From Guillardia theta CCMP2712 (lineage: Eukaryota; Protista; Cryptophyta): a stretch of DNA of 35,582 bases. The translations under genes were made by a program, and so were the position numbers. Shown here one piece after another: positions 2,524 through 21,645 of this stretch; within the stretch, counting starts at the first letter, position 1, and every line of letters begins with the position of its first letter. The DNA lies in the NCBI RefSeq assembly GCF_000315625.1, contig NW_005434483.1:1-35582 (forward strand). The letters run 5' to 3'. The notes below the pieces were generated by a model, which was not told the DNA's origin, ran no database searches, and was given only the letters and a program-made list of their open reading frames with translations.

Positions 2524-4096
2524 TCATTGCAGTCCCATGAACTTCGCATACCAAATCCACTGCATACATGTCAGCACCACTGCATTTCGTCGTCGTTAAA
2601 CCCCACCTGCTCTCCGCCAGAGTAGCAATTCATGAATCGCACGATGAATGTCATTGCAGTCTGTGGCCAGAATCCTAGGGAAAGATGAAAAACATCAGTG
2701 AACAGGGGATAGCAAACAGAGTGCCTTTGGTTTCACCTCCAGGTATGTTGGGAACTATGTTAGCTTCCCATCCATTCACAAGCTTTGAAAGACACTTGTC
2801 ACAAGATCGCCAATCGTCAGGCAGAATCTTCACCTGATAACGAGCATTGGACGAAAGACCCATGAAGTTCGCCCATTGCACGGAGTTGTCAAGAACAGGC
2901 GCAAGCTTCGATGTGTCAGCTCCTCTGGACTGTCGGAGAGGAGGGTGTGGGTCAATCGAACAGGAGCACGCAGCCAGTCACTACCTCGAGCAGGAACTTG
3001 GTCATCGAGTGGCCCAGCAGAGAGGCAAACATTCCAACACTCCAGAACATGGCTGCCTTGTAACCGAAGCAGGCCAATCGCTGTGCCTTGCTGAAGGAAC
3101 CAGGCTGGAGGAAATGGGAGGGGAGGGAGGAGATGGCTTTTGAGATGCCGCCCGTGGGCTCAGCTGCAAACTTGGCTGCAGGAGAAAGGAGCCAGACGAG
3201 CGAAAAGTCTCCGATGATTTCAAGGGCCATATCGGACGCAACGAAGTCCAACTCGTCCCAGAAAGCGTTCCTCTGCGACCTCTCTCGGATCTCTGCAGCC
3301 ATCTTGCTCACACAGCCTATGAGCAGCTCGATCCCCATGACAACCAGAAATCGATCGTTTGCGATCAACCTGTCCCTCATCCCAGCGGACACCGAGGAGA
3401 AGAATTTCAAGATAGCATTGCTCTGCAGGTGAATCCATGCATTGATTTCTGCCGTCCCAGCACGCCCTGCCTTCAGAGCTGCAAGGATATCAGCTGGAAC
3501 TTGACCTATGGCGATCTTCTTGCTGGCCAGCAAGGCAAGAACATCCTGGGGGATCCCTTTATCCCCATCGTCGCCACCTCCGCCGCCATCACCGCCTCCG
3601 CTGCCACCTGTATGGGAGCAGGCGTCAATCTTCCGCAAGATCTCGATACATATACATCAAGTGTGAGAATTGAACAGAATACCTGCTCGAACTCCTCCTC
3701 CTCCCGACCCTCCGGTGCAGGTCGGGGCGAGAGAAAAGGAGCTGGGGCGATTTGATCGCAGGGAGAGCCCCTTATGATGCGGGAGTCCGCGGAACATGAC
3801 ATTTCCATGGAATGCTTCAACTCCACTTAGCAAGATGACGACGAGGATGGTCCTCGGAAGAATCTGTAAGTGCAATCTCAGAAGACGACTCCCTCGACTT
3901 TGAGGACGAGGGTGCAATAACGGAGATAGAGTTCAAGGATCAGAAAAACACAGCACATGGAACAAGGAGGGTTCGTGAGGCTTCAAGAAAAACAATATCA
4001 TCGGCATCGACAACAACTTTCATGTGATCGAAAACTCCTGAGGCTCAGAATCTGCATGCCGGCTTCTCTTACCGCCTGCCACAGCTGCATCACCAT
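2524..4096 (-). CDS. RETICULATA-related (DUF3411) plastid membrane protein, multi-exon
   Basis: RDRLIANDRFL...FWDELDFVASD...DFSLVWLLSP, WANFMGLSSNARYQ, and C-terminal IVRFMNCYSGGEQ|WIWYAKFMGLQ*; Gly-rich linker; N-terminus MVMQLWQA|ILPRTILVVILLSGVEA-FHG reads as signal peptide plus Phe (intron 4072-3864). Start could be 4090. Confidence 0.85.
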
Positions 4097-4139: not shown

Positions 4140-4500
4140 TGACCCTACCCACTAAATTCTTACGTCTATACCCCTACCCTACTACAAGGGGTCTCCGCCT
4201 TTTGTGCCCCAATGTACCCCACAATTGCACCTGATGACCGCTACTTTTGATACATGAAAAGATGGTCATGAAGTACCTGAGCTCCCACTAAATTACCTAC
4301 CACCTCAAATCAGTGTAACACCACCCCTCCTTCATTTCCACTACCCATTGAAATCATCACCCCACCCCTCCTACACATACCTCGAAGTTCAGACTGCTGT
4401 GATCGCAATATGAGGATTCCCCAAGAAGGCCCACCCCCCCCTGAGAAAAATACCCCTCTTTTATGACTCCCCAACACCGGTAGTACCAAGTCAAAACTTT
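4140..4500. other. ACCC/TACCC-rich non-coding tract
   Basis: C-run-rich on + strand, no ORF, lies between divergent RETICULATA-related and opsin genes; same vocabulary as 27340-27780 and the reverse complement of 12600-14460. Confidence 0.5.
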
Positions 4501-4659
4501 TACAGGGCCTCCTCAGTAAATTTGGGGACGACCGGCTGAATTCCCGGAGTCCGGGCCCGACCGGCCGGCGCCGAACAACTTGACTGATATTTTCACTTAA
4601 TCTGGACTGCAGGTGGGGATGAGGAGTCTAATATAGTACACGTAGAGCAGGAACATGGC

Positions 4660-6372
4660 ATGGCGAGGATGAGGGAAGGGAGAGGGAGAGCTGTTACCTT
4701 CCTCCTGCTGCTGAGGCTGACAGGTCATGCCATCTTGGCTGAAGATGCGCCCATAGCAAAGAGCGCCAGCGTCCTAGGAGGAACGGGCGGTTTCTTGTCG
4801 CTGGCGCATGGATTTCATATCCCTTCCTACTCGATCAGTAACACAGACTCCGAGCACACGGACATCAATGTGAAATGGCCAGTGTGCTTCGGCAAGCATT
4901 CAGCCCTCCTTGGCACCTTTTGTGTCCCCGGCATGGACGCGTCAGACGCGAAGAAGGATCTTGCGTCCATCTCGTTCGATGTCGCACCTGGTGCTGGACG
5001 TTCAGTCACCCTTTTCCTCCTCGCCGATGAAGACAACGCGTATGGGAAGTTTTGGACAGACGCAGTAGCAAACAGATCCTGCTCCTCCATCTCGCAGTAC
5101 GCCAAGGCCGTGATCTCTCCCGGTGGCGATGGCAGGGTGCAAGGATCCCGCCAGCTCCAGGGGCAGCATGCGCACCTGTGGTACCTGGTGGCGGTAGACT
5201 GTGACAAGAGGATATGCCCCAACGTGACTAGCGCGCACCTCACCTTCTATCACCCCGGGACAGATGGGTCGAACGAGCTGTGCTCTGGGAGCCTGTCAGT
5301 GGCCGTGCTCAAGGAAGCCATGTTCGAAGGGTGGAGGTCGCTCAGTTTTCGCAACCTTCTGAATGTCTCGGGTGTCACTCCAGTCGGTGTCATCGTCCTC
5401 TATGCTTCCTTTGTCATCCTCTGTGCCTGCAGCTTCTACTTCTTCTTCAAGAGCAGGTCAGCGCCGAGCCTCGTGGTCAAGGATCTCCTGCAGAATGCCT
5501 TCTTCATCATGACCATCGCAGGCATCTGCTACCTGGCCATGGCGACTGGCAACGGGCTGCTGGTCCTTCGGAAGACGGGCATAGGGATCAGTTCAAAGTG
5601 GGCCTACAGTGACTCTTTGATCTCCTCCCCTGGGGACAAAGCGCACCCCAACCCGCTCTACGACGAGGAGTACGCGCTAGCTCCGACTTACCCCCTGTTC
5701 TACGTGCGGCACCTAGCATGGCTCCTCGTGTCTCCCCTTCTCCTCTACCAGATCTGCGTCGTCGTCGGCTGCACTTCTGTGCCCTTCCAGTCCCTCATGT
5801 TCTTCTCTGTCAGCCGCGTCGTCTGCCTGTTCGTTGCCTCGGCGGTGCTGGGCGGCTCCAGGTGGTTGTTTTGGATCCTCAGCATCTTCTGCTACGTTGC
5901 GCTCGTTACTGTGCTGATGGCTGATGTAACGTCCCTGTCGAAGAGGAGGGGCAAGAGGAATCACGAGATCTGCAACAAGCTGTCGACCGTTGTCTACGTT
6001 GGGTTCGGGCTGGCAGAGATCCTGTGGATAGTGACCGATGGAACCAAGGTTTGTACCGTCGACCCGAAGATCAAGCCCTTGTTCCCTGACGTGGTGTTAG
6101 GTGTTCTCCAGTGACGTAGCCATCATCTCGAACTCATTTCTGGACGTGTTCATAGTGTGCTTCTCTTCTTTCGTCTTGTTGAAAGGTACGCTTGACACGC
6201 TTGCAATCGCTGCTTCCTCCTCATGATTCTCTTGCCGTCAGAAGGGGAGGTGGCTGTCCCTGGACTGAGGTCTAGCGACATTGTTGGAATGGACGATGAT
6301 TTGTCCGCCGTAGCCTTCTCGGGGGCTGGACTGCTCGGTGACGACCTAGGAGACCTGGAAGACAATCTCTAG
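4660..6372 (+). CDS. Type-1 (microbial) opsin lacking retinal-binding Lys, with signal peptide and ~200-aa N-terminal ectodomain (exons 4660-6048, 6101-6185, 6242-6372; 534 aa)
   Basis: Helix B IAGICYLAMATGNG, helix C FYVRHLAWLLVSPLLL (cf. bacteriorhodopsin YWARYADWLFTTPLLL), helix E RWLFWILS, helix G SFLDVFIVCFS; two GT-AG introns (52 and 56 nt) give an open frame to TAG 6370-6372. Confidence 0.88.
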
Positions 6373-6419
6373 TCAGGATGGAGAAAGCAGATGATGTTAG
6401 CAGGTTTCTGAGTCCCTCA

Positions 6420-6760
6420 GCCGAGGCTCAGTGTCAGGCTCGAGGGTCAATCATTAAAAATGATTCCGATCAACTCAAAACTTGAATTGTCACGTTGGTA
6501 TAACCTCACTGAGGTGCCACAGACAGTCAGCAGACCCGGCCGGGCGGCGCCGCGGGCGGCCGGGAGCCTGGCACCGTAGCCCGGGCTGGAGGGCCTGCGC
6601 GGCCAGGCCATGACCACAGCCGCGATGATGAGTACCGCTGCCCGGCCACATGACCTGCTAAATGACCGGGAGACTGCCCGGCAGGAGACCTGCCGCGGGG
6701 CGGCGGGACCGTGCGCCCGGCGGAGCAGTGCCGCTGCAGTGCCGGGAGACTGAAAATATG
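6420..6760. promoter_or_regulatory. GC/CpG-rich island upstream of the OGT-like gene
   Basis: CCGG/CGCG/GGCC-dense tract with the same vocabulary as 140-1310; no credible ORF. Confidence 0.35.
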
Positions 6761-6982: not shown

Positions 6983-7351
6983 ATGAAGAGGATCCGTTGT
7001 GGAGGTACCGGAGTCTCCGCTGGGTTCCTGCTTGTCTGCTCCCCGCTCTTCCTCCTTGCCTGCCTGGGATCAGCGAAAGAAGCCAGAAGATGTCCAGAGC
7101 AGTTTCGCACTGCCAAGGAGCAGCGGGGCGCGGGAGAGATGTACATGAAGAGAGCGGGTGCGGAGGACGGCAAGCTTGCCGCCGCATGCTTCGAAGCAGC
7201 TCTGAAATCTTACTCCTACGGAGAGGCCCAGGAGCGAGGAGAAGTTGGGATGCTCCTAGCAGACGCACTTGAGATGGCGGGAGACGTCAAGGCTGCGACG
7301 AATCAGGTGACCTCATCTACATAAGCGCCATGCTCCTGCTTGTTCTGTTGG

Positions 7352-7450
<99 letters not shown>

Positions 7451-8736
7451 CTAACCTTTCAACTCACCTCCACCGCATCCAGATCAAGGAGATGATGTCT
7501 CAGTTTCCGACTTCACCAGTGCCGCACTTCAAGCTTGGGAATGTAGCACGGGCGACAGAGCGATGGGAGGAGGCGGTGGGGCACTACAGGAAGGCCATCG
7601 CTTTAGCTCCTCAGTTCGTGAACGCTCGCGTCAACCTGGCCATGGCGTTCAGGGGGATGAACCGCCTCGACGACGCCATCCAGAGCTACCGGGAGGCGCT
7701 GGAGTACGAGCAGGAGCGAGCCGACGTGTTTGTCAACTTCGGGGTGACTCTCGACGCGGCGGGGAAGATGGAGGAGGCGAAGGAGGCGTACGAGAAGGCG
7801 ATAGCTCTCGATCCCCTCCTCTACCAGGCCTACTTCAACTTCGGCGTGCTCATGGCCGAGAGCTTCAAGGACCGGGAGGCAGGGATTAAGCTGTACCATC
7901 AGTCTCTGAAGATCGAGCCCAACTTTCCTGATGCCTACCACACGGTAGGAAGTAAGCGAGGGAGGACAGGAGAGGCTGTGGAGAAGGAGGGAGCGAGTGG
8001 GAGGAAAGGAAGGGGGCTGTGGGGCAAGGGGTAGAGGCTGTGAGGACGACGACAGAACCTGTAGGGAGGGGGAGACTGCGGGAAGGAGTACGGCAAAGGA
8101 GGGAGAGACTGACTTTGACCTCCAGCTCGGAAACATCTACACGACCCTGGGGAAGTACGAGGAGGCGAAGAGGTTCCTCGAGATGGCTGTCGCTCTGCGC
8201 CCGGACGACAGTCGCTTCCACAACTCACTTGGCATGCTGGCGGATGCCCTTGGGGTGAGGAGGAGGAGATGTTGGAGGGAAGGGGAGAGTGAAGGAGGGA
8301 GGGAGTGAAGGGAGAGAAGTGGGAAAGTAGGAGAGGGAGAGGGGAAGAGAGGAGAAGAGGAAGGAGAGAAGAGGCTGCTGGGGGGGGGGGAGGAAGGAAG
8401 AAAAGCAAAGATGGGGGAGCAGTAGAAAGAGAGTACGCAGGAGCAAGTGATCAAATAGAGAGGAGCAGAGGAGGGCGGGAAGAGGAGGAGGAGCAACAGG
8501 AGCATAACTCTGGTGTGCCCTAGGATAATCAGGCAGCCCTGCGTTACTATCAGCGGTCTGTCAACCAGTCCCCGAGATCTCCTGCCGCCATCATCAACGC
8601 TGCCAAGGTTCTCAACTCACAGGCGAGGTACAAGGAAGCAGAGGCCATGTGCATGGAGGCCATTCGCATCGACCCCAAGTACGGGGAAGCCTACTGCCAG
8701 CTCGGAGACGTCTACAAGGACTCGGAACAGGTAATC

Positions 8737-8793
<57 letters not shown>

Positions 8794-11289
8794 CATGATT
8801 ATCTTTCACCTGCTGCCCCCTGCCCCTCCGCCCTCTGTTCCTCCCACAAGTGCCTCTGTCCTGTCCGCTTCTACTTCCTTCATCTTGCTCTTCCACCCTC
8901 CACCCTCCTCCTACTCGCATCCCTCCCATCCTCCTCATCGTCGCCCTCCCGTCACCTGTCGGCAGATCGGGCTATCAGTGCAGGCGTACTCGGAGGGGAT
9001 TAAGCTTGCTCCGGGCTACGAAGCGGGCTTCTGCAACTTCTTCTACGCCACCATCTTCGCCTGCCACTGGGAGGGGCGGGGGAGGCACGTGAAGCGACTG
9101 CGGGAGATCATGAAGGGATACTTGCAAGGAAAGGACCCGCTGATCCACGAGTGCGTCCAGCCATTCCAGGTGCTCCTCCTGCTCCTGCTCCTGCTCCTGC
9201 TCCACCACTACCTCCTCCTCTTCCTCCCTCTTTGGGGTGAAGTCATCTGTTGATTCGTTCCTGCTAGAGCTTGGCCTATCCCCTCGAGCCCGAGGAGCTT
9301 CTCGCCATCGCCTCCTTCCATGCCAACAAGGCTGCCGTCCATGTCAGTGGAGTGGTGGGGAAGAACTTCAAACCCTTTCCCCTCGTCCGCTATCCCCTCA
9401 TCGTCCATGCTGCTCACAATCCACACGGCGAAGGCAGCAGGAAGCTGAGGATCGGGTTTGTGTCGGCTGACTACAAGGACCATCCCGTTGTCAAGGATCT
9501 GGTCAGTCTTGTCCTCTTTCTTTCCCTCCTCCCCTCCTCCCCTCCTCATCTCCTCTCCTCCTCTTCCTACTCTCCACTCCTGTCCTCCTCTTCTGCTCCC
9601 CTGCTCTCCTGCAACCTTCCCATACTCAGCTTCTCCTCGGCTCTCNNNNNNNNNNNNNNNNNNNNNNNNNNNNNNNNNNNNNNNNNNNNNNNNNNNNNNN
9701 NNNNNNNNNNNNNNNNNNNNNNNNNNNNNNNNNNNNNNNNNNNNNNNNNNNNNNNNNNNNNNNNNNNNNNNNNNNNNNNNNNNNNNNNNNNNNNNNNNNN
9801 NNNNNNNNNNNNNNNNNNNNNNNNNNNNNNNNNNNNNNNNNNNNNNNNNNNNNNNNNNNNNNNNNNNNNNNNNNNNNNNNNNNNNNNNNNNNNNNNNNNN
9901 NNNNNNNNNNNNNNNNNNNNNNNNNNNNNNNNNNNNNNNNNNNNNNNNNNNNNNNNNNNNNNNNNNNNNNNNNNNNNNNNNNNNNNNNNNNNNNNNNNNN
10001 NNNNNNNNNNNNNNNNNNNNNNNNNNNNNNNNNNNNNNNNNNNNNNNNNNNNNNNNNNNNNNNNNNNNNNNNNNNNNNNNNNNNNNNNNNNNNNNNNNNN
10101 NNNNNNNNNNNNNNNNNNNNNNNNNNNNNNNNNNNNNNNNNNNNNNNNNNNNNNNNNNNNNNNNNNNNNNNNNNNNNNNNNNNNNNNNNNNNNNNNNNNN
10201 NNNNNNNNNNNNNNNNNNNNNNNNNNNNNNNNNNNNNNNNNNNNNNNNNNNNNNNNNNNNNNNNNNNNNNNNNNNNNNNNNNNNNNNNNNNNNNNNNNNN
10301 NNNNNNNNNNNNNNNNNNNNNNNNNNNNNNNNNNNNNNCCTTCTTCTCCATCCTCCTCAACTTCCTTCAGGTCCGCAAGATGTCCTCTCGAGCAGCAGCT
10401 TCCTTCGTCTACGCTTCTGCTGGTACCTCTCATCCTTCCCTCCTCCCCTTCCTCGCTCTCCCGCCGCCCTCAGCCCCTTTGTTGCTGCCGTTCTCACTTC
10501 CACCATCATTACCATCTCCTCTCCTTCGTCATCTTGCCCGTCCTGCCTCCTGCCTCCTGCCTCCTGCCTCCTGCCTCCTGCCTCCTGCCTCCTGCCTCCT
10601 CCTGCCTCCTGCCTCCTCCTCCTCCTTTCTAGTCTTCTCCATCTCCTCTCTTCTCCAACAACCACAAAGTTCACGCGTCATCAAGGACAAGGACGAACGA
10701 CGCTAGTGCGCTCCATGAAGGACTACGTGGACGTTGCTGGTGAGGAACAGGAATGCTTTCGGTGTGCAGTCCTAACATTAAGGCTTCAGTCAAACTAGGG
10801 AGGAAGAAGAATAGAAAGAAACTCAGGAAGATGAAGAAAGGTCAGCCAAGTCCTCCTTCCTCCCGGGCGATGACGAGGGTCCGCAGAGCTGGAAGAGGGA
10901 AGGTTCAAGAGTCCTATGTTCGACACCAGGAGGTCTGCTGCTCTTACCCTGGACTGCTGTCTTATCCTATTCCTCCTCCTTACATCCCTCCTCTACTCAC
11001 GCTCCTCCTGCACCTCCCTCACCTCGTCTGCAGATGGGTCAAGACCTTTCAGAAGCTGATCCGGATGCTATGGGACGCGCACGCAGGTGATGCTGACGGC
11101 AGGAAGATTTGCTGCCATACCTTCTCTCCTGCTCGCCTACTATCCTTCCTCCACTCCTTGCCCCTCATTCACTCCATCATTTACCCGTTCACAGATGGCA
11201 TTGATGAGATTTCTGTACATCAAATCTCGGAACTCCTGCAGCAAAGGAAAATGCACGTAGTCGCCGCCGATATTGTCCCTCCCAGCTGA
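6983..11289 (+). CDS. TPR-repeat GT41 glycosyltransferase (O-GlcNAc transferase, SEC/OGT-like), multi-exon, interrupted by assembly gap
   Basis: About 8-10 TPRs, then CVQPFQ|SLAYPL and LRIGFVSADYKDHP; after the gap VRKMSSRAAAS, LVRSMKDYVDVA and SPMFDTRR|WVKTFQKLIRMLW, matching the OGT/SEC C-terminal catalytic lobe. Confidence 0.85.
7353..7450 (+). repeat. (CTCCTG)n microsatellite in intron
   Basis: About 16 perfect hexamer copies inside intron 7307-7482; source of the spurious poly-Leu ORF. Confidence 0.95.
8737..8793 (+). repeat. (CTCCTG)n microsatellite in intron
   Basis: About 9 copies just after the GT donor at 8731. Confidence 0.9.
9646..10338. other. Assembly gap (693 N)
   Basis: Run of N. 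Confidence 1.
10542..10615 (+). repeat. (CCTCCTG)n heptamer repeat in intron
   Basis: About 10 copies of CCTCCTG/CCTGCCT. Confidence 0.85.
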
Positions 11290-18800: not shown

Positions 18801-18938
18801 CTCTCCTCCTCTTCTTCGCCACCCACATCCACCTCGCCTTCCTCGCTCACATCATTTTCGAAACTTCAAAAAAGGCGGGGAGGTGGTGGCAGATGCATAT
18901 TCAGGGGGTAGGGGTGGTGAGTCGTCGGGGCGTTGGGC

Positions 18939-21645
18939 ATGGCGGGCTTGGAGGGAGTGCGGGGGAAGGAGGCGATGGGGAGGAGGGTGGCGCTAGGGGG
19001 GGGGAAGGTGAGGATAGGACGAGGAGCTGAGTGTGAGATCAGCTTGCAGTGGGACGGGATGTCTCGCACGCACGCCGTTATCGAGGGTGTGGGTCAGCCG
19101 TCCACCTTCGTCAACAGCGAAGGCGGGAAAATTTTCACCTCCTTCAGGATCCGAGACTGCGGGAGCTCCAACGGAGTCTTCGTGAACCAGGTGAAGGTGT
19201 CAGAGTGCCTGCTAAGAGACGGGGACGAGATCGGGTTCGGACGAGGCGCCTCGTTGCAGGAAGGGGAGGCCATACATAGCCGTCATGTCGAGTATGCGTT
19301 CCTGTTCCGGACGTTGAAGCTCCATGGCACGCCGGGAGGCTCTCGGGAGGGGCCAGCTGAAGCGTCCAAGGACGGGAGGATGTGCCCTCCCTGCAGATCC
19401 TTCCTCTACCCGCCCACTGCATGGGCTGATAAGAAGGACCTCCGGGAGTTTGCCAGGCCACCGCCAGCAGATTTGGAGCTGGACTGGGTGCATGGGTACC
19501 GGAGCGCAAGGCAGATCCTAGAGCCTAAGTCAGAGGCGAAGAAGGCAGGGCGATGCCTCCACCTCAACAACGCCAAGTTCCTCTCCCCCTCCTCCATCGC
19601 CTACCCGGCTTCCCGCTATGTTGTCATCTTCGACGTTGTCGAACGAACGCAGCGGTACTTCAAGGAGCACGACAACGACTGCGTCAGCCTCGCTGTTGCC
19701 GCCTCCAAGACCGTCGCTGCGTCTGGGCAGCTCGCGAGCTTCGAGGAGAGGAGCCCTCCTATCTACGTGTGGGACGTGTCCTCCTGCTCCGTACTGACCA
19801 AGTTGCGGGGCTTCCACAGGAACGCAGTGACTGCGCTTGCGTTCAGCCCGACGGAGCAGTTCCTGGCCTCGATAGGAGGAGACGACATGCACTCTCTGGC
19901 GGTGTACGACTGGGAGAAGAAGCAGCTGCTGTTCAGCGGCAACGGCTACGTGGAGGAAGTGTACGCCGTAGCCTTCAGCCCGTTCAATCTGGACGAGATC
20001 CTTCAGGTCGGGAACAAGCACATCAAGTTCTGGAGCCTCGAGGCCGAGAAGTCTGTCATGGCGACGTTCCGACAGGAGAAGAACGCCAAGGAAGGGCAGA
20101 AACGGACTGAACCCCAGCTCGTCGCCTGCTGTGCGTACACCGCTGAAGGGATGGCGATCTGCGGGCTAGAGGAGGGCCATATCGCCATGTACAGCAGGAC
20201 CAAGACCGGGAGGAACGAGTGCGTCGACCGCATCGACAACGCGCACGCAGCTCCTGTGCTTGCTCTGTGCGCGATGCAGAACGGGATCATCTCGTCTGGA
20301 CGGGACGGCTACGTGAAGGTGAGAAAAGTTGAGGAGGCGGGGACGGAAGAAGGGGGAGGAGGAGAGCAAGGGGAGAGGGGAGGAGAGAAAGAGCTGATGC
20401 TGTTCCGGCAAGGTGTGGGCACCTCCATCGACGATCACGGGGAGGAAGGAGGGCGGCAAGTCACGGGAGGGGACAAGGAGGAGCACAAGGGAGACGATGA
20501 CGACGAAACTCAAGGTTGACGTGAAGGGAGTCTTCCTCGGGGGGGCGCAGAGCACGACGGTGGTCACCAGCCTCGACTATCTCAAGGGGAACATCCTGTG
20601 CGGCTCCTCCTCCGGACAGATCTTCCTCATCGCCCTCAAGGACGGGTCCATCCAGCAGCTCGTGTCCACTCACTTCGCAGGCGTGACGGCGGTGGACGTC
20701 AGCCCCTACGGGGACTCCTACTACCTGACCGTGTCGGAGGACAAGACGATCAAGAGGTGGGACGTACATAGCAGGGAGCTCCAGCTCTCTGTCTACGTCG
20801 GCCTGCAGTGCACCAGCGTCTCCATCCATCCGTCGGAGTCGCTCTACGCGCTGGGTCACCGTCATGGCAACTTCACCGTCTGGGACGTGCCGCCGCTGCC
20901 GCAGGCCCCTCGCTGCCTCCTCAAGTCTTCACAGAGGAAGGAGGATGTGACGCAGGTACGCTTCTCCCCGGACGGTCGCTACCTCGCCGTCGCCAGCCGA
21001 GAGCAAGTCATCGACCTTTACAGCGTCGAGAGCGACTTCCGGCACGTGGGGACCTGCCGGGGGCACTCAGGAGCCGTCCAGCACGTGGACTTTTCCGCTG
21101 ACTCTCGCTGGCTCCGTTCCTCGTGCACTGCTGCGGAGCTTCTCTTCTGGGAAGTTCCAAGCTGCCGCCCCCAGGGACGCTCCTCCCTTCTCCGCGACGT
21201 CCCTTGGCACACCCGAACCGTCGTCTTCGACTGGTCCCTGTCCTCCATCTGGCCTCCTGCTGCCCTCGTCTCCAGCATCGACTCTGTCAACGTCAGCAAC
21301 GATCTTCTGCTCTGCGCGTCCGGCAACGACCGAGGCGAGGTGAAACTGTACCCCTTCCCGGCCATCGGCGACATGCAGGAGACGCAGCGCAACTGCAAGA
21401 GGCTTCTCCTCCACAGCTCGCACGTCCATGGCGTCGCCTTCACCAACGAGGACGGCTGGCTCATCTCCGTCTCCTCCGATGGGTCGGCGGCTCAGTGGCG
21501 CGTGAAGCGGGAGGGGAGCAACAGCGGCAGCAACAGGCGGGCGATTGTGTCGGAGTGGCACGAGGACGGAGGGATCAGGCAGCGGGAGATCTCGCGGCCC
21601 CCGAGGATGGGAACCTTCGCCAACCCGCACAGCCGGCACGTGTGA
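18939..21645 (+). CDS. FHA domain + HELP motif + WD40 tandem propeller (EML/EMAP-like); intron 20319-20412
   Basis: FHA: IGRG..MSRTHA..IRDCGSSNGVFVN..LRDGDEIGFG. HELP: PPPADLELDWVHGYRS. EML-type WD40: HDNDCVSLA, CRGHSGAVQHVDFSADSRWLRS, HSSHVHGVAF. Confidence 0.9.

What the first reader, a model, noticed from the sequence alone, without database searches (positions are those of the whole stretch)
4660..6372. Retinal-free microbial opsin fused to a GPR180/TMEM145-like (GOLD) ectodomain: candidate non-photic receptor
Seen: a signal-peptide-like start, then ~200 aa with several Cys, then a full type-1 opsin 7TM; ectodomain and helices A-F sit in one uninterrupted 1389-nt exon, so the fusion is not a gene-model artefact. 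Recalled knowledge: the ordered motifs LLGTFCV, LFLLADE, W, SC, HLWYLVAVDC and HLTFYH resemble the luminal N-terminal GOLD-like domain of GPR180/TMEM145, which is normally attached to the GPCR-like GOST 7TM domain, not to a type-1 opsin. Inference: a domain swap produced a ligand- or cargo-sensing receptor or channel built on an opsin scaffold. I know of no description of this architecture, but cannot check that here.
Basis: partly seen in the sequence, partly recalled or inferred. Interest (0 to 1): 0.9.

Follow-up and report, generated by a model that had tools for sequence, protein, structure and literature searches.

The report
Lysine-less algal opsin with GOLD-like ectodomain
This expressed gene of the alga Guillardia theta joins a secreted-type beta-sandwich domain, most like the one on animal GPR180/TMEM145 trafficking receptors, to a bacteriorhodopsin-type membrane domain that has lost its light-sensing pocket, an arrangement I found described in no paper.

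Summary
Window 4660-6372(+) is Guillardia theta GUITHDRAFT_148137 (Gt_148137, 534 aa) with three exons. Spliced transcript contigs from three studies carry the ectodomain and the 7TM on one mRNA.

The 7TM is a true type-1 opsin: Pfam Bac_rhodopsin E 2.7e-14, and the fold matches archaeal rhodopsins at TM 0.86-0.91. There is no GOST signal. It has Val at the Schiff-base Lys position, Ala at D85, and Phe/Ala/Glu at W182/Y185/P186.

The ectodomain models as a beta-sandwich. Its best solved match is the GPR180 GOLD domain (Z 8.6), and language-model neighbours of three divergent members are all GOST N-domain families. Sequence evidence is weak: hhalign P 0.0014 against G. theta's own GPR180-like protein. 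I rate homology at about 70%.

New here:
- The architecture defines a small family seen only in Cryptista (Guillardia, with two paralogs, Baffinella, Hemiselmis, Goniomonas).
- Two members keep the Lys and the full retinal pocket, so the lysine was lost repeatedly.

The gene was already listed among the G. theta rhodopsin-like genes, but with its ectodomain trimmed. UniRef's automatic name hints at GPR180. Function is inferred: a non-photic receptor or cargo adaptor.

The parts
4457..4659 (+). 5' untranslated region
   Evidence: Transcript contig X1 starts at 4457; X3 and X6 start at 4644 and 4643, all upstream of the ATG.
4660..6048 (+). Exon 1 (1389 nt, codons 1-463): signal-like N-terminus, ectodomain, linker and helices A-F
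   Evidence: ORF, protein P0001, splice joint at 6048|6101 in three runs.
4660..4740 (+). Signal-peptide-like N-terminus (residues 1-27). No predictor was run. Orthologues P0016, P0025, P0005 and P0062 have cleaner hydrophobic N-termini.
   Evidence: Sequences. Modelled as a low-confidence helix 2-26.
4804..5289 (+). GOLD-like beta-sandwich ectodomain (residues 49-210). It has six invariant Cys and conserved N-x-S/T sequons at N138 and N188.
   Evidence: AF2 model with pLDDT 80. GPR180 NTD 9fow is the top VIA match, Z 8.6. Atlas neighbours are PF21892/PF21904/PF21902. hhalign against the G. theta GPR180-like N-domain gives P 0.0014, and 0 of 500 shuffles reach that score.
5290..5379 (+). Flexible linker with a short amphipathic helix (residues 211-240)
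   Evidence: pLDDT 46-63 and helix 214-227 in the full-length model.
5380..6042 (+). Opsin helices A-F (residues 241-461), including an extended, highly conserved B-C loop (residues 296-347, nt 5545-5700)
   Evidence: Pfam Bac_rhodopsin, secondary structure, conservation of the motif YLAMATGNG...W..S...PNP.Y...TYP.
5707..5721 (+). Helix C motif R-H-L-A-W: Arg350 (BR R82) kept, Ala353 in place of the counterion D85, Trp354 (W86) kept
   Evidence: Read directly. Alignment to solved rhodopsins. R350 is invariant in the family.
6049..6100 (+). Intron 1 (52 nt, GT..AG)
   Evidence: Skipped in contigs of X1, X3 and X6.
6101..6185 (+). Exon 2: helix G. Asp478 (BR D212) is kept. Val482 (nt 6155-6157) replaces the Schiff-base Lys216.
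   Evidence: The alignment in Konno 2020 S1 dataset also shows no Lys.
6186..6241 (+). Intron 2 (56 nt, GT..AG)
   Evidence: Skipped in contigs of X1, X3 and X6.
6242..6372 (+). Exon 3: end of helix G, disordered cytoplasmic tail and stop codon (6370-6372)
   Evidence: pLDDT below 50 for residues 498-534.
6340..6369 (+). Conserved acidic C-terminal motif DDLGDLEDNL. It is identical in P0002, P0004 and P0040; other members end in an acidic cluster plus a terminal L/I/V. A sorting-signal role is inference only.
   Evidence: Alignment columns 700-709.
6373..6469 (+). 3' untranslated region (minimum extent)
   Evidence: Contigs X3 and X6 end at 6469 and 6455. X1 runs on past 6700.

Best explanation
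Gt_148137 is an expressed membrane glycoprotein-type gene of the cryptophyte Guillardia theta. Its order of parts is: signal-like peptide, a disulfide-rich extracellular or luminal beta-sandwich of the GOLD kind (closest to the N-terminal domains of GPR180/TMEM145-type GOST proteins), a flexible linker, then a genuine type-1 (bacteriorhodopsin-family) 7TM domain.

The 7TM has lost the Schiff-base lysine (Val482), the counterion D85 (Ala353) and several retinal-pocket residues. It therefore almost certainly carries no covalently bound retinal and is not a photoreceptor.

It belongs to a small family seen only in Cryptista in which this architecture is constant. Two members still have the lysine and a complete pocket. 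The ancestor was therefore most likely a retinal-binding 'GOLD-rhodopsin', and the lysine was lost independently in several lineages, including this one.

Inferred mechanism: the ectodomain binds an extracellular or luminal ligand or cargo. It sits on the conserved extracellular face of the opsin (the extended B-C loop, R82 and D212 are all kept). The opsin barrel serves as a non-photic transducer or membrane scaffold, and the conserved acidic C-terminus directs sorting. This would be a functional analogue of GOST cargo receptors built on an opsin scaffold.

Shown: gene structure, transcription, both domain identities at fold level, loss of the pocket, family distribution. Inferred: homology of the ectodomain with GOST GOLD domains (about 70%), membrane topology, ligand or cargo binding and trafficking role (about 35%).
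For: - Gene model and transcript. RT-PCR and RT-qPCR detection is reported in PMC7714340.
- Opsin identity: Pfam 53.6 bits. phmmer to solved rhodopsins gives E 7e-9. Foldseek's top 50 are all microbial rhodopsins, TM 0.86-0.91.
- Pocket loss.
- Ectodomain fold: AF2 pLDDT 80.
- Ectodomain matches: 9fow GPR180 NTD ranks 1 at Z 8.6. p24 and TMED1 GOLD domains score Z 7.2-7.6. The Atlas fold search ranks a GPR180 cluster first, TM 0.54 and 0.61.
- Atlas feature neighbours of P0001, P0025 and P0064 are all PF21892/PF21904/PF21902, scores 0.87-0.89 with 182-191 shared features.
- Sub-threshold Pfam TMEM145_N hits appear in two homologues.
- A collinear hhalign to the N-domain of G. theta's own PF10192 protein gives P 0.0014 over 109 columns. 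It pairs the helix Cys and the WY..VA.C Cys of both families. None of 500 shuffles reaches its score.
- Family: 61 hits in 1.84 billion representatives, and every long one carries Bac_rhodopsin, never GOST TM.
- Taxa.
- Lys-bearing members P0025 and P0040 have a full ectodomain.
- The tree shows Lys scattered among lysine-less clades.
Against: - No Pfam GOLD or GOST N-domain model reaches threshold on any member.
- A profile search of PDB sequences finds nothing.
- Structural Z values are nearly tied with DeCLIC NTD, C1q/TNF and collagen-binding sandwiches.
- hhalign to a metazoan-only GPR180 N-domain profile is not significant, P 0.094.
- Interdomain geometry is uncertain (pTM 0.54).
- No localisation, ligand, glycosylation or electrophysiology data exist.
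- The signal peptide was not tested with a predictor, and this copy has Arg and His in its hydrophobic core.
Confidence: 0.6

Rival explanations
1. The ectodomain is a generic jelly-roll or lectin-like beta-sandwich unrelated by descent to GOLD/GOST N-domains (for example DeCLIC-NTD-like or C1q/TNF-like). The resemblance to GPR180 would be convergent fold similarity. The protein would then be an opsin-anchored adhesin or lectin.
For: VIA-align over representatives ranks DeCLIC NTD first at Z 8.2, with C1q/TNF and Pgp3 at 7.4-7.6, tied with the GOLD domains. Foldseek ranks Pgp3 and DeCLIC above 9fow. No Pfam hit reaches threshold.
Against: - Language-model neighbours are exclusively GOST N-domain families for three members that share only about 30% identity.
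- 9fow is rank 1 and the only chain at Z 8 or more in the second-look alignment.
- The only sub-threshold Pfam family seen twice is TMEM145_N, and the two matches are collinear.
- hhalign to the G. theta GPR180-like N-domain gives P 0.0014 with matching Cys positions.
Confidence: 0.22
2. The protein is a non-photic regulator or chaperone of other membrane proteins, such as G. theta's many retinal-binding rhodopsins or a P-type H+-ATPase. This is how yeast opsin-related proteins (HSP30, YRO2, MRH1) are thought to act. The ectodomain would serve only for folding or oligomerisation.
For: Lysine-less opsins with such roles are known in fungi, as discussed in PMC7714340. G. theta has 42 rhodopsin-like genes. 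The TM core is conserved without a pocket.
Against: The ectodomain and the extracellular B-C loop are the most conserved parts of the protein. This points to an extracellular or luminal binding function rather than an intramembrane partner alone. The family also occurs in Goniomonas. No interaction data exist either way.
Confidence: 0.2
3. It is still light-sensitive, binding retinal non-covalently or another chromophore.
For: W86, W189, R82 and D212 equivalents are kept. Close relatives P0025 and P0040 look like functional rhodopsins.
Against: K216 is Val, D85 is Ala, T89 is Val, W182 is Phe, Y185 is Ala and P186 is Glu. Other family lineages replace W86 as well.
Confidence: 0.05
4. It is a decaying relic of a rhodopsin gene with no function.
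For: The catalytic pocket is lost. Few raw RNA reads were found in one run (5 reads at 6% sampling).
Against: - The reading frame is intact across three exons and correctly spliced in three studies.
- RT-PCR and qPCR detection is reported.
- Lysine-less lineages persist across Cryptista with invariant residues and six invariant Cys.
Confidence: 0.04

Closest known systems
Rh-noK genes of Guillardia theta (Konno et al. 2020, PMC7714340), which include this gene as Gt_148137
   Same: It is the same gene. The paper lists it among 42 microbial rhodopsin-like genes. Nine of these lack the Schiff-base lysine, and six of those are reported as expressed. Its primers map here.
   Different: That study aligned only the 7TM part (S1 dataset). 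It does not mention the N-terminal domain, the paralog relationship with Gt_164142, or lysine-bearing relatives.
[quoted passage not shown]
   Same: The overall layout is the same: a luminal or extracellular GOLD-type sandwich ahead of seven helices. The best structural match of the ectodomain is the GPR180 NTD. G. theta also has canonical GOST genes.
   Different: The 7TM here is a Bac_rhodopsin domain with no detectable similarity to PF10192 or PF06814. Hoel et al. noted only general structural similarity of the TMEM87A TM domain to microbial opsins.
Fungal opsin-related proteins (HSP30, YRO2, MRH1) and bacterial lysine-less or retinal-free rhodopsins (Rh-noK; FArhodopsins, PMC10308929)
   Same: They are type-1 opsin folds that have lost retinal binding and are thought to act without light.
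   Different: None of them has a large N-terminal ectodomain. They are unrelated lineages.
Modular (fusion) microbial rhodopsins: histidine-kinase, guanylyl-cyclase and phosphodiesterase rhodopsins, and bestrhodopsins
   Same: They are type-1 rhodopsins fused to another functional domain.
   Different: In those the partner is cytoplasmic or a channel, and it sits C-terminal or within the membrane. Here the partner is an N-terminal extracellular or luminal binding-type domain. This statement rests on my own knowledge plus the lack of any hit in the literature searches.

Membership tests
Microbial (type-1) rhodopsin family, Pfam PF01036 Bac_rhodopsin | Sequence match to the family profile above the curated cut-off | tested here: met
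   53.6 bits against a cut-off of 24.6, residues 246-481, profile positions 6-209 of 224. Ten of 11 homologues match, best E 2.8e-25.
Microbial (type-1) rhodopsin family, Pfam PF01036 Bac_rhodopsin | Seven-helix fold superposable on solved microbial rhodopsins | tested here: met
   Foldseek's top 50 are all microbial rhodopsins, target TM-score 0.86-0.91, rmsd 2-3.6 A.
Functional retinal-binding rhodopsin | Schiff-base lysine in helix G (BR K216) | tested here: not met
   Val482, nt 6155-6157.
Functional retinal-binding rhodopsin | Counterion and pocket residues (BR D85, T89, W182, Y185, P186) | tested here: not met
   The residues at these positions are Ala353, Val, Phe, Ala and Glu. R82, W86, W189 and D212 equivalents are kept.
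GOST family (GOLD domain + GOST 7TM) | GOST-type 7TM domain (PF06814 GOST_TM or PF10192 GPR180-TMEM145_TM) | tested here: not met
   No hit at E up to 10. hhalign of the family TM profile against a GPR180/TMEM145 TM profile gives P 0.22. No GOST chain appears in Foldseek's top 50.
GOST family (GOLD domain + GOST 7TM) | N-terminal luminal or extracellular GOLD-type beta-sandwich | tested here: inconclusive
   The fold is a beta-sandwich. 9fow GPR180 NTD scores Z 8.6 at rank 1 and p24 GOLD domains score Z 7.2-7.6, but these are nearly tied with non-GOLD sandwiches.
GPR180/TMEM145 N-terminal domain (PF21892 TMEM145_N, PF21870 GP180_GOLD) | Match to the Pfam profile above the cut-off (28.1 bits) | tested here: not met
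   There is no hit for P0001, and only 13.7-14 bits in P0007 and P0062. Caveat: G. theta's bona fide PF10192 protein P0073 also gets no N-domain hit, and PF21892 finds nothing in this genome. The models are therefore insensitive here.
GPR180/TMEM145 N-terminal domain (PF21892 TMEM145_N, PF21870 GP180_GOLD) | Profile-level sequence similarity, and the Cys pair linking a small helix to the beta7-beta8 loop (described for GPR180 in PMC11605061) | tested here: inconclusive
   hhalign gives P 0.0014 over 109 collinear columns against the P0073 N-domain and aligns both Cys positions. None of 500 shuffles reaches the score. Against an arthropod-dominated profile P is 0.01.
Rh-noK / opsin-related proteins | Type-1 opsin homologue lacking the retinal-binding lysine, and expressed | tested here: met
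   PMC7714340 lists it among the 25 genes quantified by qPCR.

The most novel reading that the evidence does not exclude
'GOLD-rhodopsins' are a distinct, Cryptista-wide class of type-1 rhodopsins in which an extracellular or luminal GOLD-type binding domain is functionally coupled to the opsin barrel. In the lysine-bearing members (P0025, P0040), light would control ligand or cargo binding or release, or ligand would gate a photocycle. This would be an output mode not known for microbial rhodopsins. The lysine-less members such as Gt_148137 would be light-independent receptors or cargo adaptors derived from them. A still bolder version, that GOST 7TM domains descend from such opsins, has no sequence support here.
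Probability: 0.2. Interest if true: 0.85.

Novelty: new variant of a known kind. Interest (0 to 1): 0.68.

Why it matters
Microbial rhodopsins are known with cytoplasmic enzyme or channel partners. I found no report of one with a large extracellular binding-type domain.

A conserved family with that layout offers a natural experiment. It spans photosynthetic and heterotrophic cryptists and includes both pocket-intact and pocket-dismantled members. It can show how an opsin scaffold is re-used once light sensing is abandoned.

It also gives a second, independent example of the 'GOLD domain on seven helices' design. That could help explain what the poorly understood GOST receptors do.

The lysine-bearing members are candidates for new optogenetic behaviour. 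The lysine-less ones give the Rh-noK problem a concrete, testable handle in the form of an ectodomain that can be expressed and used for ligand fishing.

Tried and rejected
- Pfam on the isolated ectodomain of P0001 and of seven homologues gave nothing above threshold.
- A profile search of all PDB sequences with the ectodomain alignment gave only chance hits, E about 1.
- The ectodomain profile searched against 1.84 billion representatives reached no GOST protein. It found only the opsin-fused family.
- hhalign against a metazoan-only GPR180 N-domain profile was not significant, P 0.094.
- hhalign of opsin TM against GOST TM gave P 0.22. I therefore rejected the idea that this 7TM is intermediate between opsins and GOST.
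- A PF21892 search of the G. theta genome found nothing, even at the canonical GOST gene.
- The word-based homologue search with the G. theta GOST protein gave only two hits, so the GOST profile is dominated by arthropods.
- The look-up of encoding contigs for P0025 found nothing on record.
- Raw RNA reads of run X20 gave only 5 reads at the 3' end, too few to place the transcript start.
- Model coordinates are not exposed, so disulfide distances and the ectodomain/B-C-loop contact could not be measured.
Full report
**Organism and gene.** The window is contig C191 of the Guillardia theta CCMP2712 assembly. The ORF 4660-6114 and two short downstream exons give exactly the annotated 534-aa protein GUITHDRAFT_148137 / XP_005820098.1 / UniProt L1IA60 (P0001). 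The exons are 4660-6048, 6101-6185 and 6242-6372. The introns are 52 and 56 nt, both GT..AG.

**Transcription.** Assembled contigs from three runs of three different studies lie on the stretch with both introns precisely removed. They are continuous from 4457 (X1) or 4643/4644 (X6, X3) to beyond 6455. The ectodomain and the 7TM are therefore on one mRNA, and transcripts start upstream of the ATG.

Konno et al. 2020 (PMC7714340) list the gene as Gt_148137 among 42 microbial rhodopsin-like genes.
- Their full-length RT-PCR primers map to 4660-4679 and 6352-6369.
- Their qPCR primers map to 6145-6168 and 6294-6314, spanning intron 2.
- The gene is one of the 25 they could quantify.

One run of raw RNA reads gave only five reads, so it adds nothing about level or ends.

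**The 7TM domain.**
- Pfam gives Bac_rhodopsin only, 53.6 bits against a cut-off of 24.6 for residues 246-481.
- phmmer finds 34 solved microbial rhodopsins, best E 7e-9.
- The full-length AF2 model has pLDDT 76, and 85-96 in the helices.
- Its 50 best Foldseek PDB matches are all microbial rhodopsins, target TM-score 0.86-0.91.
- No GOST model (PF10192, PF06814) matches at E up to 10.
- A profile-profile comparison of the family's TM region with a GPR180/TMEM145 TM alignment is at chance level, P 0.22.

**Loss of the retinal pocket.** In the HMMER alignment to cyanorhodopsin 6lm0 the helix-G motif reads L-D-V-F-I-V-C against L-D-V-C-A-K-V. The Schiff-base Lys is therefore Val482, nt 6155-6157. 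Helix C reads R-H-L-A-W:
- R82 and W86 are kept.
- D85 is replaced by Ala353.
- T89 is replaced by Val, and D96 by Gln.

In helix F, W182/Y185/P186 are Phe/Ala/Glu, and W189 is kept. D212 (Asp478) is kept. This agrees with the scan's other first-stage note on this stretch (s1-441331). It also agrees with the trimmed alignment in Konno's S1 dataset. Covalent retinal binding is excluded by sequence. Non-covalent binding is unlikely.

**The ectodomain fold.** Residues 49-234, folded with a nine-sequence alignment, give a confident model (pLDDT 80, pTM 0.76). It has about nine strands and two short helices forming a beta-sandwich. Six Cys are invariant and two N-glycosylation sequons are conserved. 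Together with the signal-like N-terminus and the N-out topology of type-1 opsins, this fits an extracellular or luminal location. That placement is inference.

**Is the ectodomain a GOLD/GOST N-domain? Structural evidence.**
1. Among the 1000 chains Foldseek ranks highest, VIA-align puts the GPR180 N-terminal GOLD domain 9fow first: Z 8.6, rmsd 3.3 A, 118 of 133 residues. It is the only chain at Z 8 or more.
2. In the unbiased representative search, GOLD domains score Z 6.9-7.6 (p24gamma2, GPR180, TMED1, p24beta1, SPF). DeCLIC NTD scores 8.2 and C1q/TNF-type sandwiches 7.4. By the tool's own guidance these are ties.
3. The ESM Atlas fold searches rank GPR180/TMEM145 clusters first, both with the Atlas model (TM 0.61 and 0.53) and with my model (TM 0.54).

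**Language-model and sequence evidence.**
4. Feature neighbours of the ectodomains of P0001, P0025 and P0064 are, in each case, exclusively GOST N-domain families. These are PF21892 TMEM145_N, PF21904 CAND6-7_N and PF21902 PTM1-like_N, at scores 0.87-0.89 with 182-191 shared features. The three proteins share about 27-35% identity. The scores are below the tool's 0.9 line, so each is a lead on its own. The agreement of three divergent members is what carries weight.
5. Two homologues give sub-threshold but collinear Pfam TMEM145_N hits, E 0.06 and 0.08.
6. G. theta has a canonical GPR180/TMEM145 gene (L003 = P0073, PF10192 E 2e-31). hhalign of the opsin-family ectodomain profile against its N-domain gives P 0.0014 over 109 collinear columns. 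It pairs L-G-x-F-C, the V-x-L-x-D-D...W...C helix, and the W-Y-x-x-A-x-x-C strand. None of 500 composition-preserving shuffles reaches that score; the maximum is 26.9 against 27.2.

**Evidence against the homology.**
- No Pfam N-domain model reaches threshold.
- A PDB sequence-profile search is blank.
- A metazoan-only profile gives P 0.094.

The Pfam negative is weak evidence. The same models also miss the N-domain of the bona fide G. theta GOST protein.

My estimate is about 70% that the ectodomain is homologous to GOST-type GOLD domains. I put it near 100% that it is a beta-sandwich of that general shape.

UniRef's automatic name for L1IA60 is 'Intimal thickness related receptor IRP domain-containing protein'. 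An InterPro signature of the GPR180 family therefore once matched it. Current Pfam does not reproduce that match.

**The family.** The ectodomain profile finds only 61 proteins, many of them fragments, in 1.84 billion representatives. All nine hits of at least 364 aa with an intact reading frame that I scanned carry Bac_rhodopsin and never a GOST TM. Sources with a name are:
- Guillardia theta.
- Baffinella frigidus (P0005).
- Hemiselmis rufescens (P0016).
- The heterotrophic cryptist Goniomonas avonlea (P0064).

G. theta has a second copy on contig C53 (L002, 34% identity in the ectodomain, more introns). From its qPCR primers this is Konno's Gt_164142.

The residue at the Schiff-base position varies: V, Q, S, L, H, R or K.

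Two members, P0025 (an MMETSP transcript) and P0040, have D-V-x-x-K. They also have R-Y-I-D-W in helix C and W182, Y185 and W189, which is a complete pocket. The contig of P0040 (L005) shows that it too has the full ectodomain, and the same DLGDLEDNL C-terminus as Gt_148137.

In a maximum-likelihood tree rooted at the midpoint only:
- P0040(K) is sister to the clade holding Gt_148137 (support 94/92).
- P0025(K) sits among lysine-less clades.

The simplest reading is a retinal-binding ancestor that already carried the ectodomain, followed by at least three independent pocket losses. The rooting is not secured by an outgroup.

**Conservation and likely site of action.** Besides the ectodomain, the invariant or near-invariant positions cluster on the extracellular side of the barrel:
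- the end of helix B (Y-L-A-M-A-T-G-N-G);
- a family-specific extension of the B-C loop of about 45 residues, with beta-strands at pLDDT 69-89;
- R82 and D212.

Konno's alignment had to cut this loop out, so the other G. theta rhodopsins in that alignment lack it. A conserved extracellular face under a conserved ectodomain suggests that the two work together, as the GOLD domain and 7TM do in TMEM87A. The model's interdomain confidence is too low (pTM 0.54) to show this.

The C-terminus is an acidic cluster ending in L/I/V in most members, and is identical in four of them. A sorting signal is a reasonable guess and nothing more.

**Literature.** Full-text searches combining GOLD domain, rhodopsin, cryptophyte, GPR180, TMEM145, Rh-noK and N-terminal extracellular domain found no paper describing this architecture. 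Hoel et al. (PMC9711517) note only that the TMEM87A 7TM resembles microbial opsins structurally. Mitrovic et al. (PMC11605061) describe the GPR180 GOLD domain and its helix-to-loop disulfide. About 1.7 million PMC articles and most subscription journals are outside the searched corpus.

**Verdict.** It is probable but unproven on GOLD homology, and speculative on function.

The gene itself is known and annotated. What is new is recognising the ectodomain, recognising the family it defines, and finding that lysine-bearing 'GOLD-rhodopsins' exist alongside repeatedly derived lysine-less ones. I class it as a new variant of a known kind and score interest at 0.68.

Noticed in passing
L002 = G000:C53:152998-156561, minus strand (ectodomain exon at L002:1411-2172): A second G. 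theta copy of the same architecture. Its ectodomain is 34% identical and its opsin helices lie on several further exons. The qPCR primers for Konno's Gt_164142 map here, so it is also expressed. It belongs to the subfamily with Gln at the Lys position.
   Followed up: partly
P0025 (MMETSP transcript) and L005:1-1574 (Logan contig holding P0040): Family members that keep the Schiff-base Lys, D85, W86, W182, Y185 and W189 together with the full GOLD-like ectodomain. They are candidate light-sensitive 'GOLD-rhodopsins'. The species of origin was not identified.
   Followed up: partly
L003 (G000:C23:125527-129096) and L004 (G000:C4:871044-874385): G. theta has canonical GOST genes: one GPR180/TMEM145-type (PF10192, E 2e-31) and one GOST_TM-type (PF06814). 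The Pfam N-domain models detect neither N-domain.
   Followed up: partly
P0062 residues about 40-160: One divergent family member (Arg at the Lys position) carries an extra Cys-rich segment of about 110 residues ahead of the GOLD-like domain.
   Followed up: no
window 6487-6700 and beyond: Transcript contig X1 (3410 nt) continues past the other contigs' 3' ends and beyond 6700. Either the 3' UTR is long or the assembly merges with the neighbouring gene's transcript.
   Followed up: no
window 2955-3638 (-): Upstream neighbour exon encodes a RETICULATA-like domain (PF11891, E 7e-28).
   Followed up: no
window 7330-8031 (+): Downstream neighbour encodes a TPR-repeat protein (TPR_11, E 1e-23).
   Followed up: no
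window 18933-21642 (+): Two adjoining open frames encode an FHA domain followed by the first and second EML-type beta-propellers (PF23409 E 4e-46, PF23414 E 4e-70). This is probably one EMAP-like microtubule-associated gene.
   Followed up: no
window 9000-11000: A low-GC stretch (0.37-0.38 against about 0.55 elsewhere) with a strong C-over-G skew. It contains CT-rich microsatellites, for example (TCCTGCC)n at 10541-10623.
   Followed up: no
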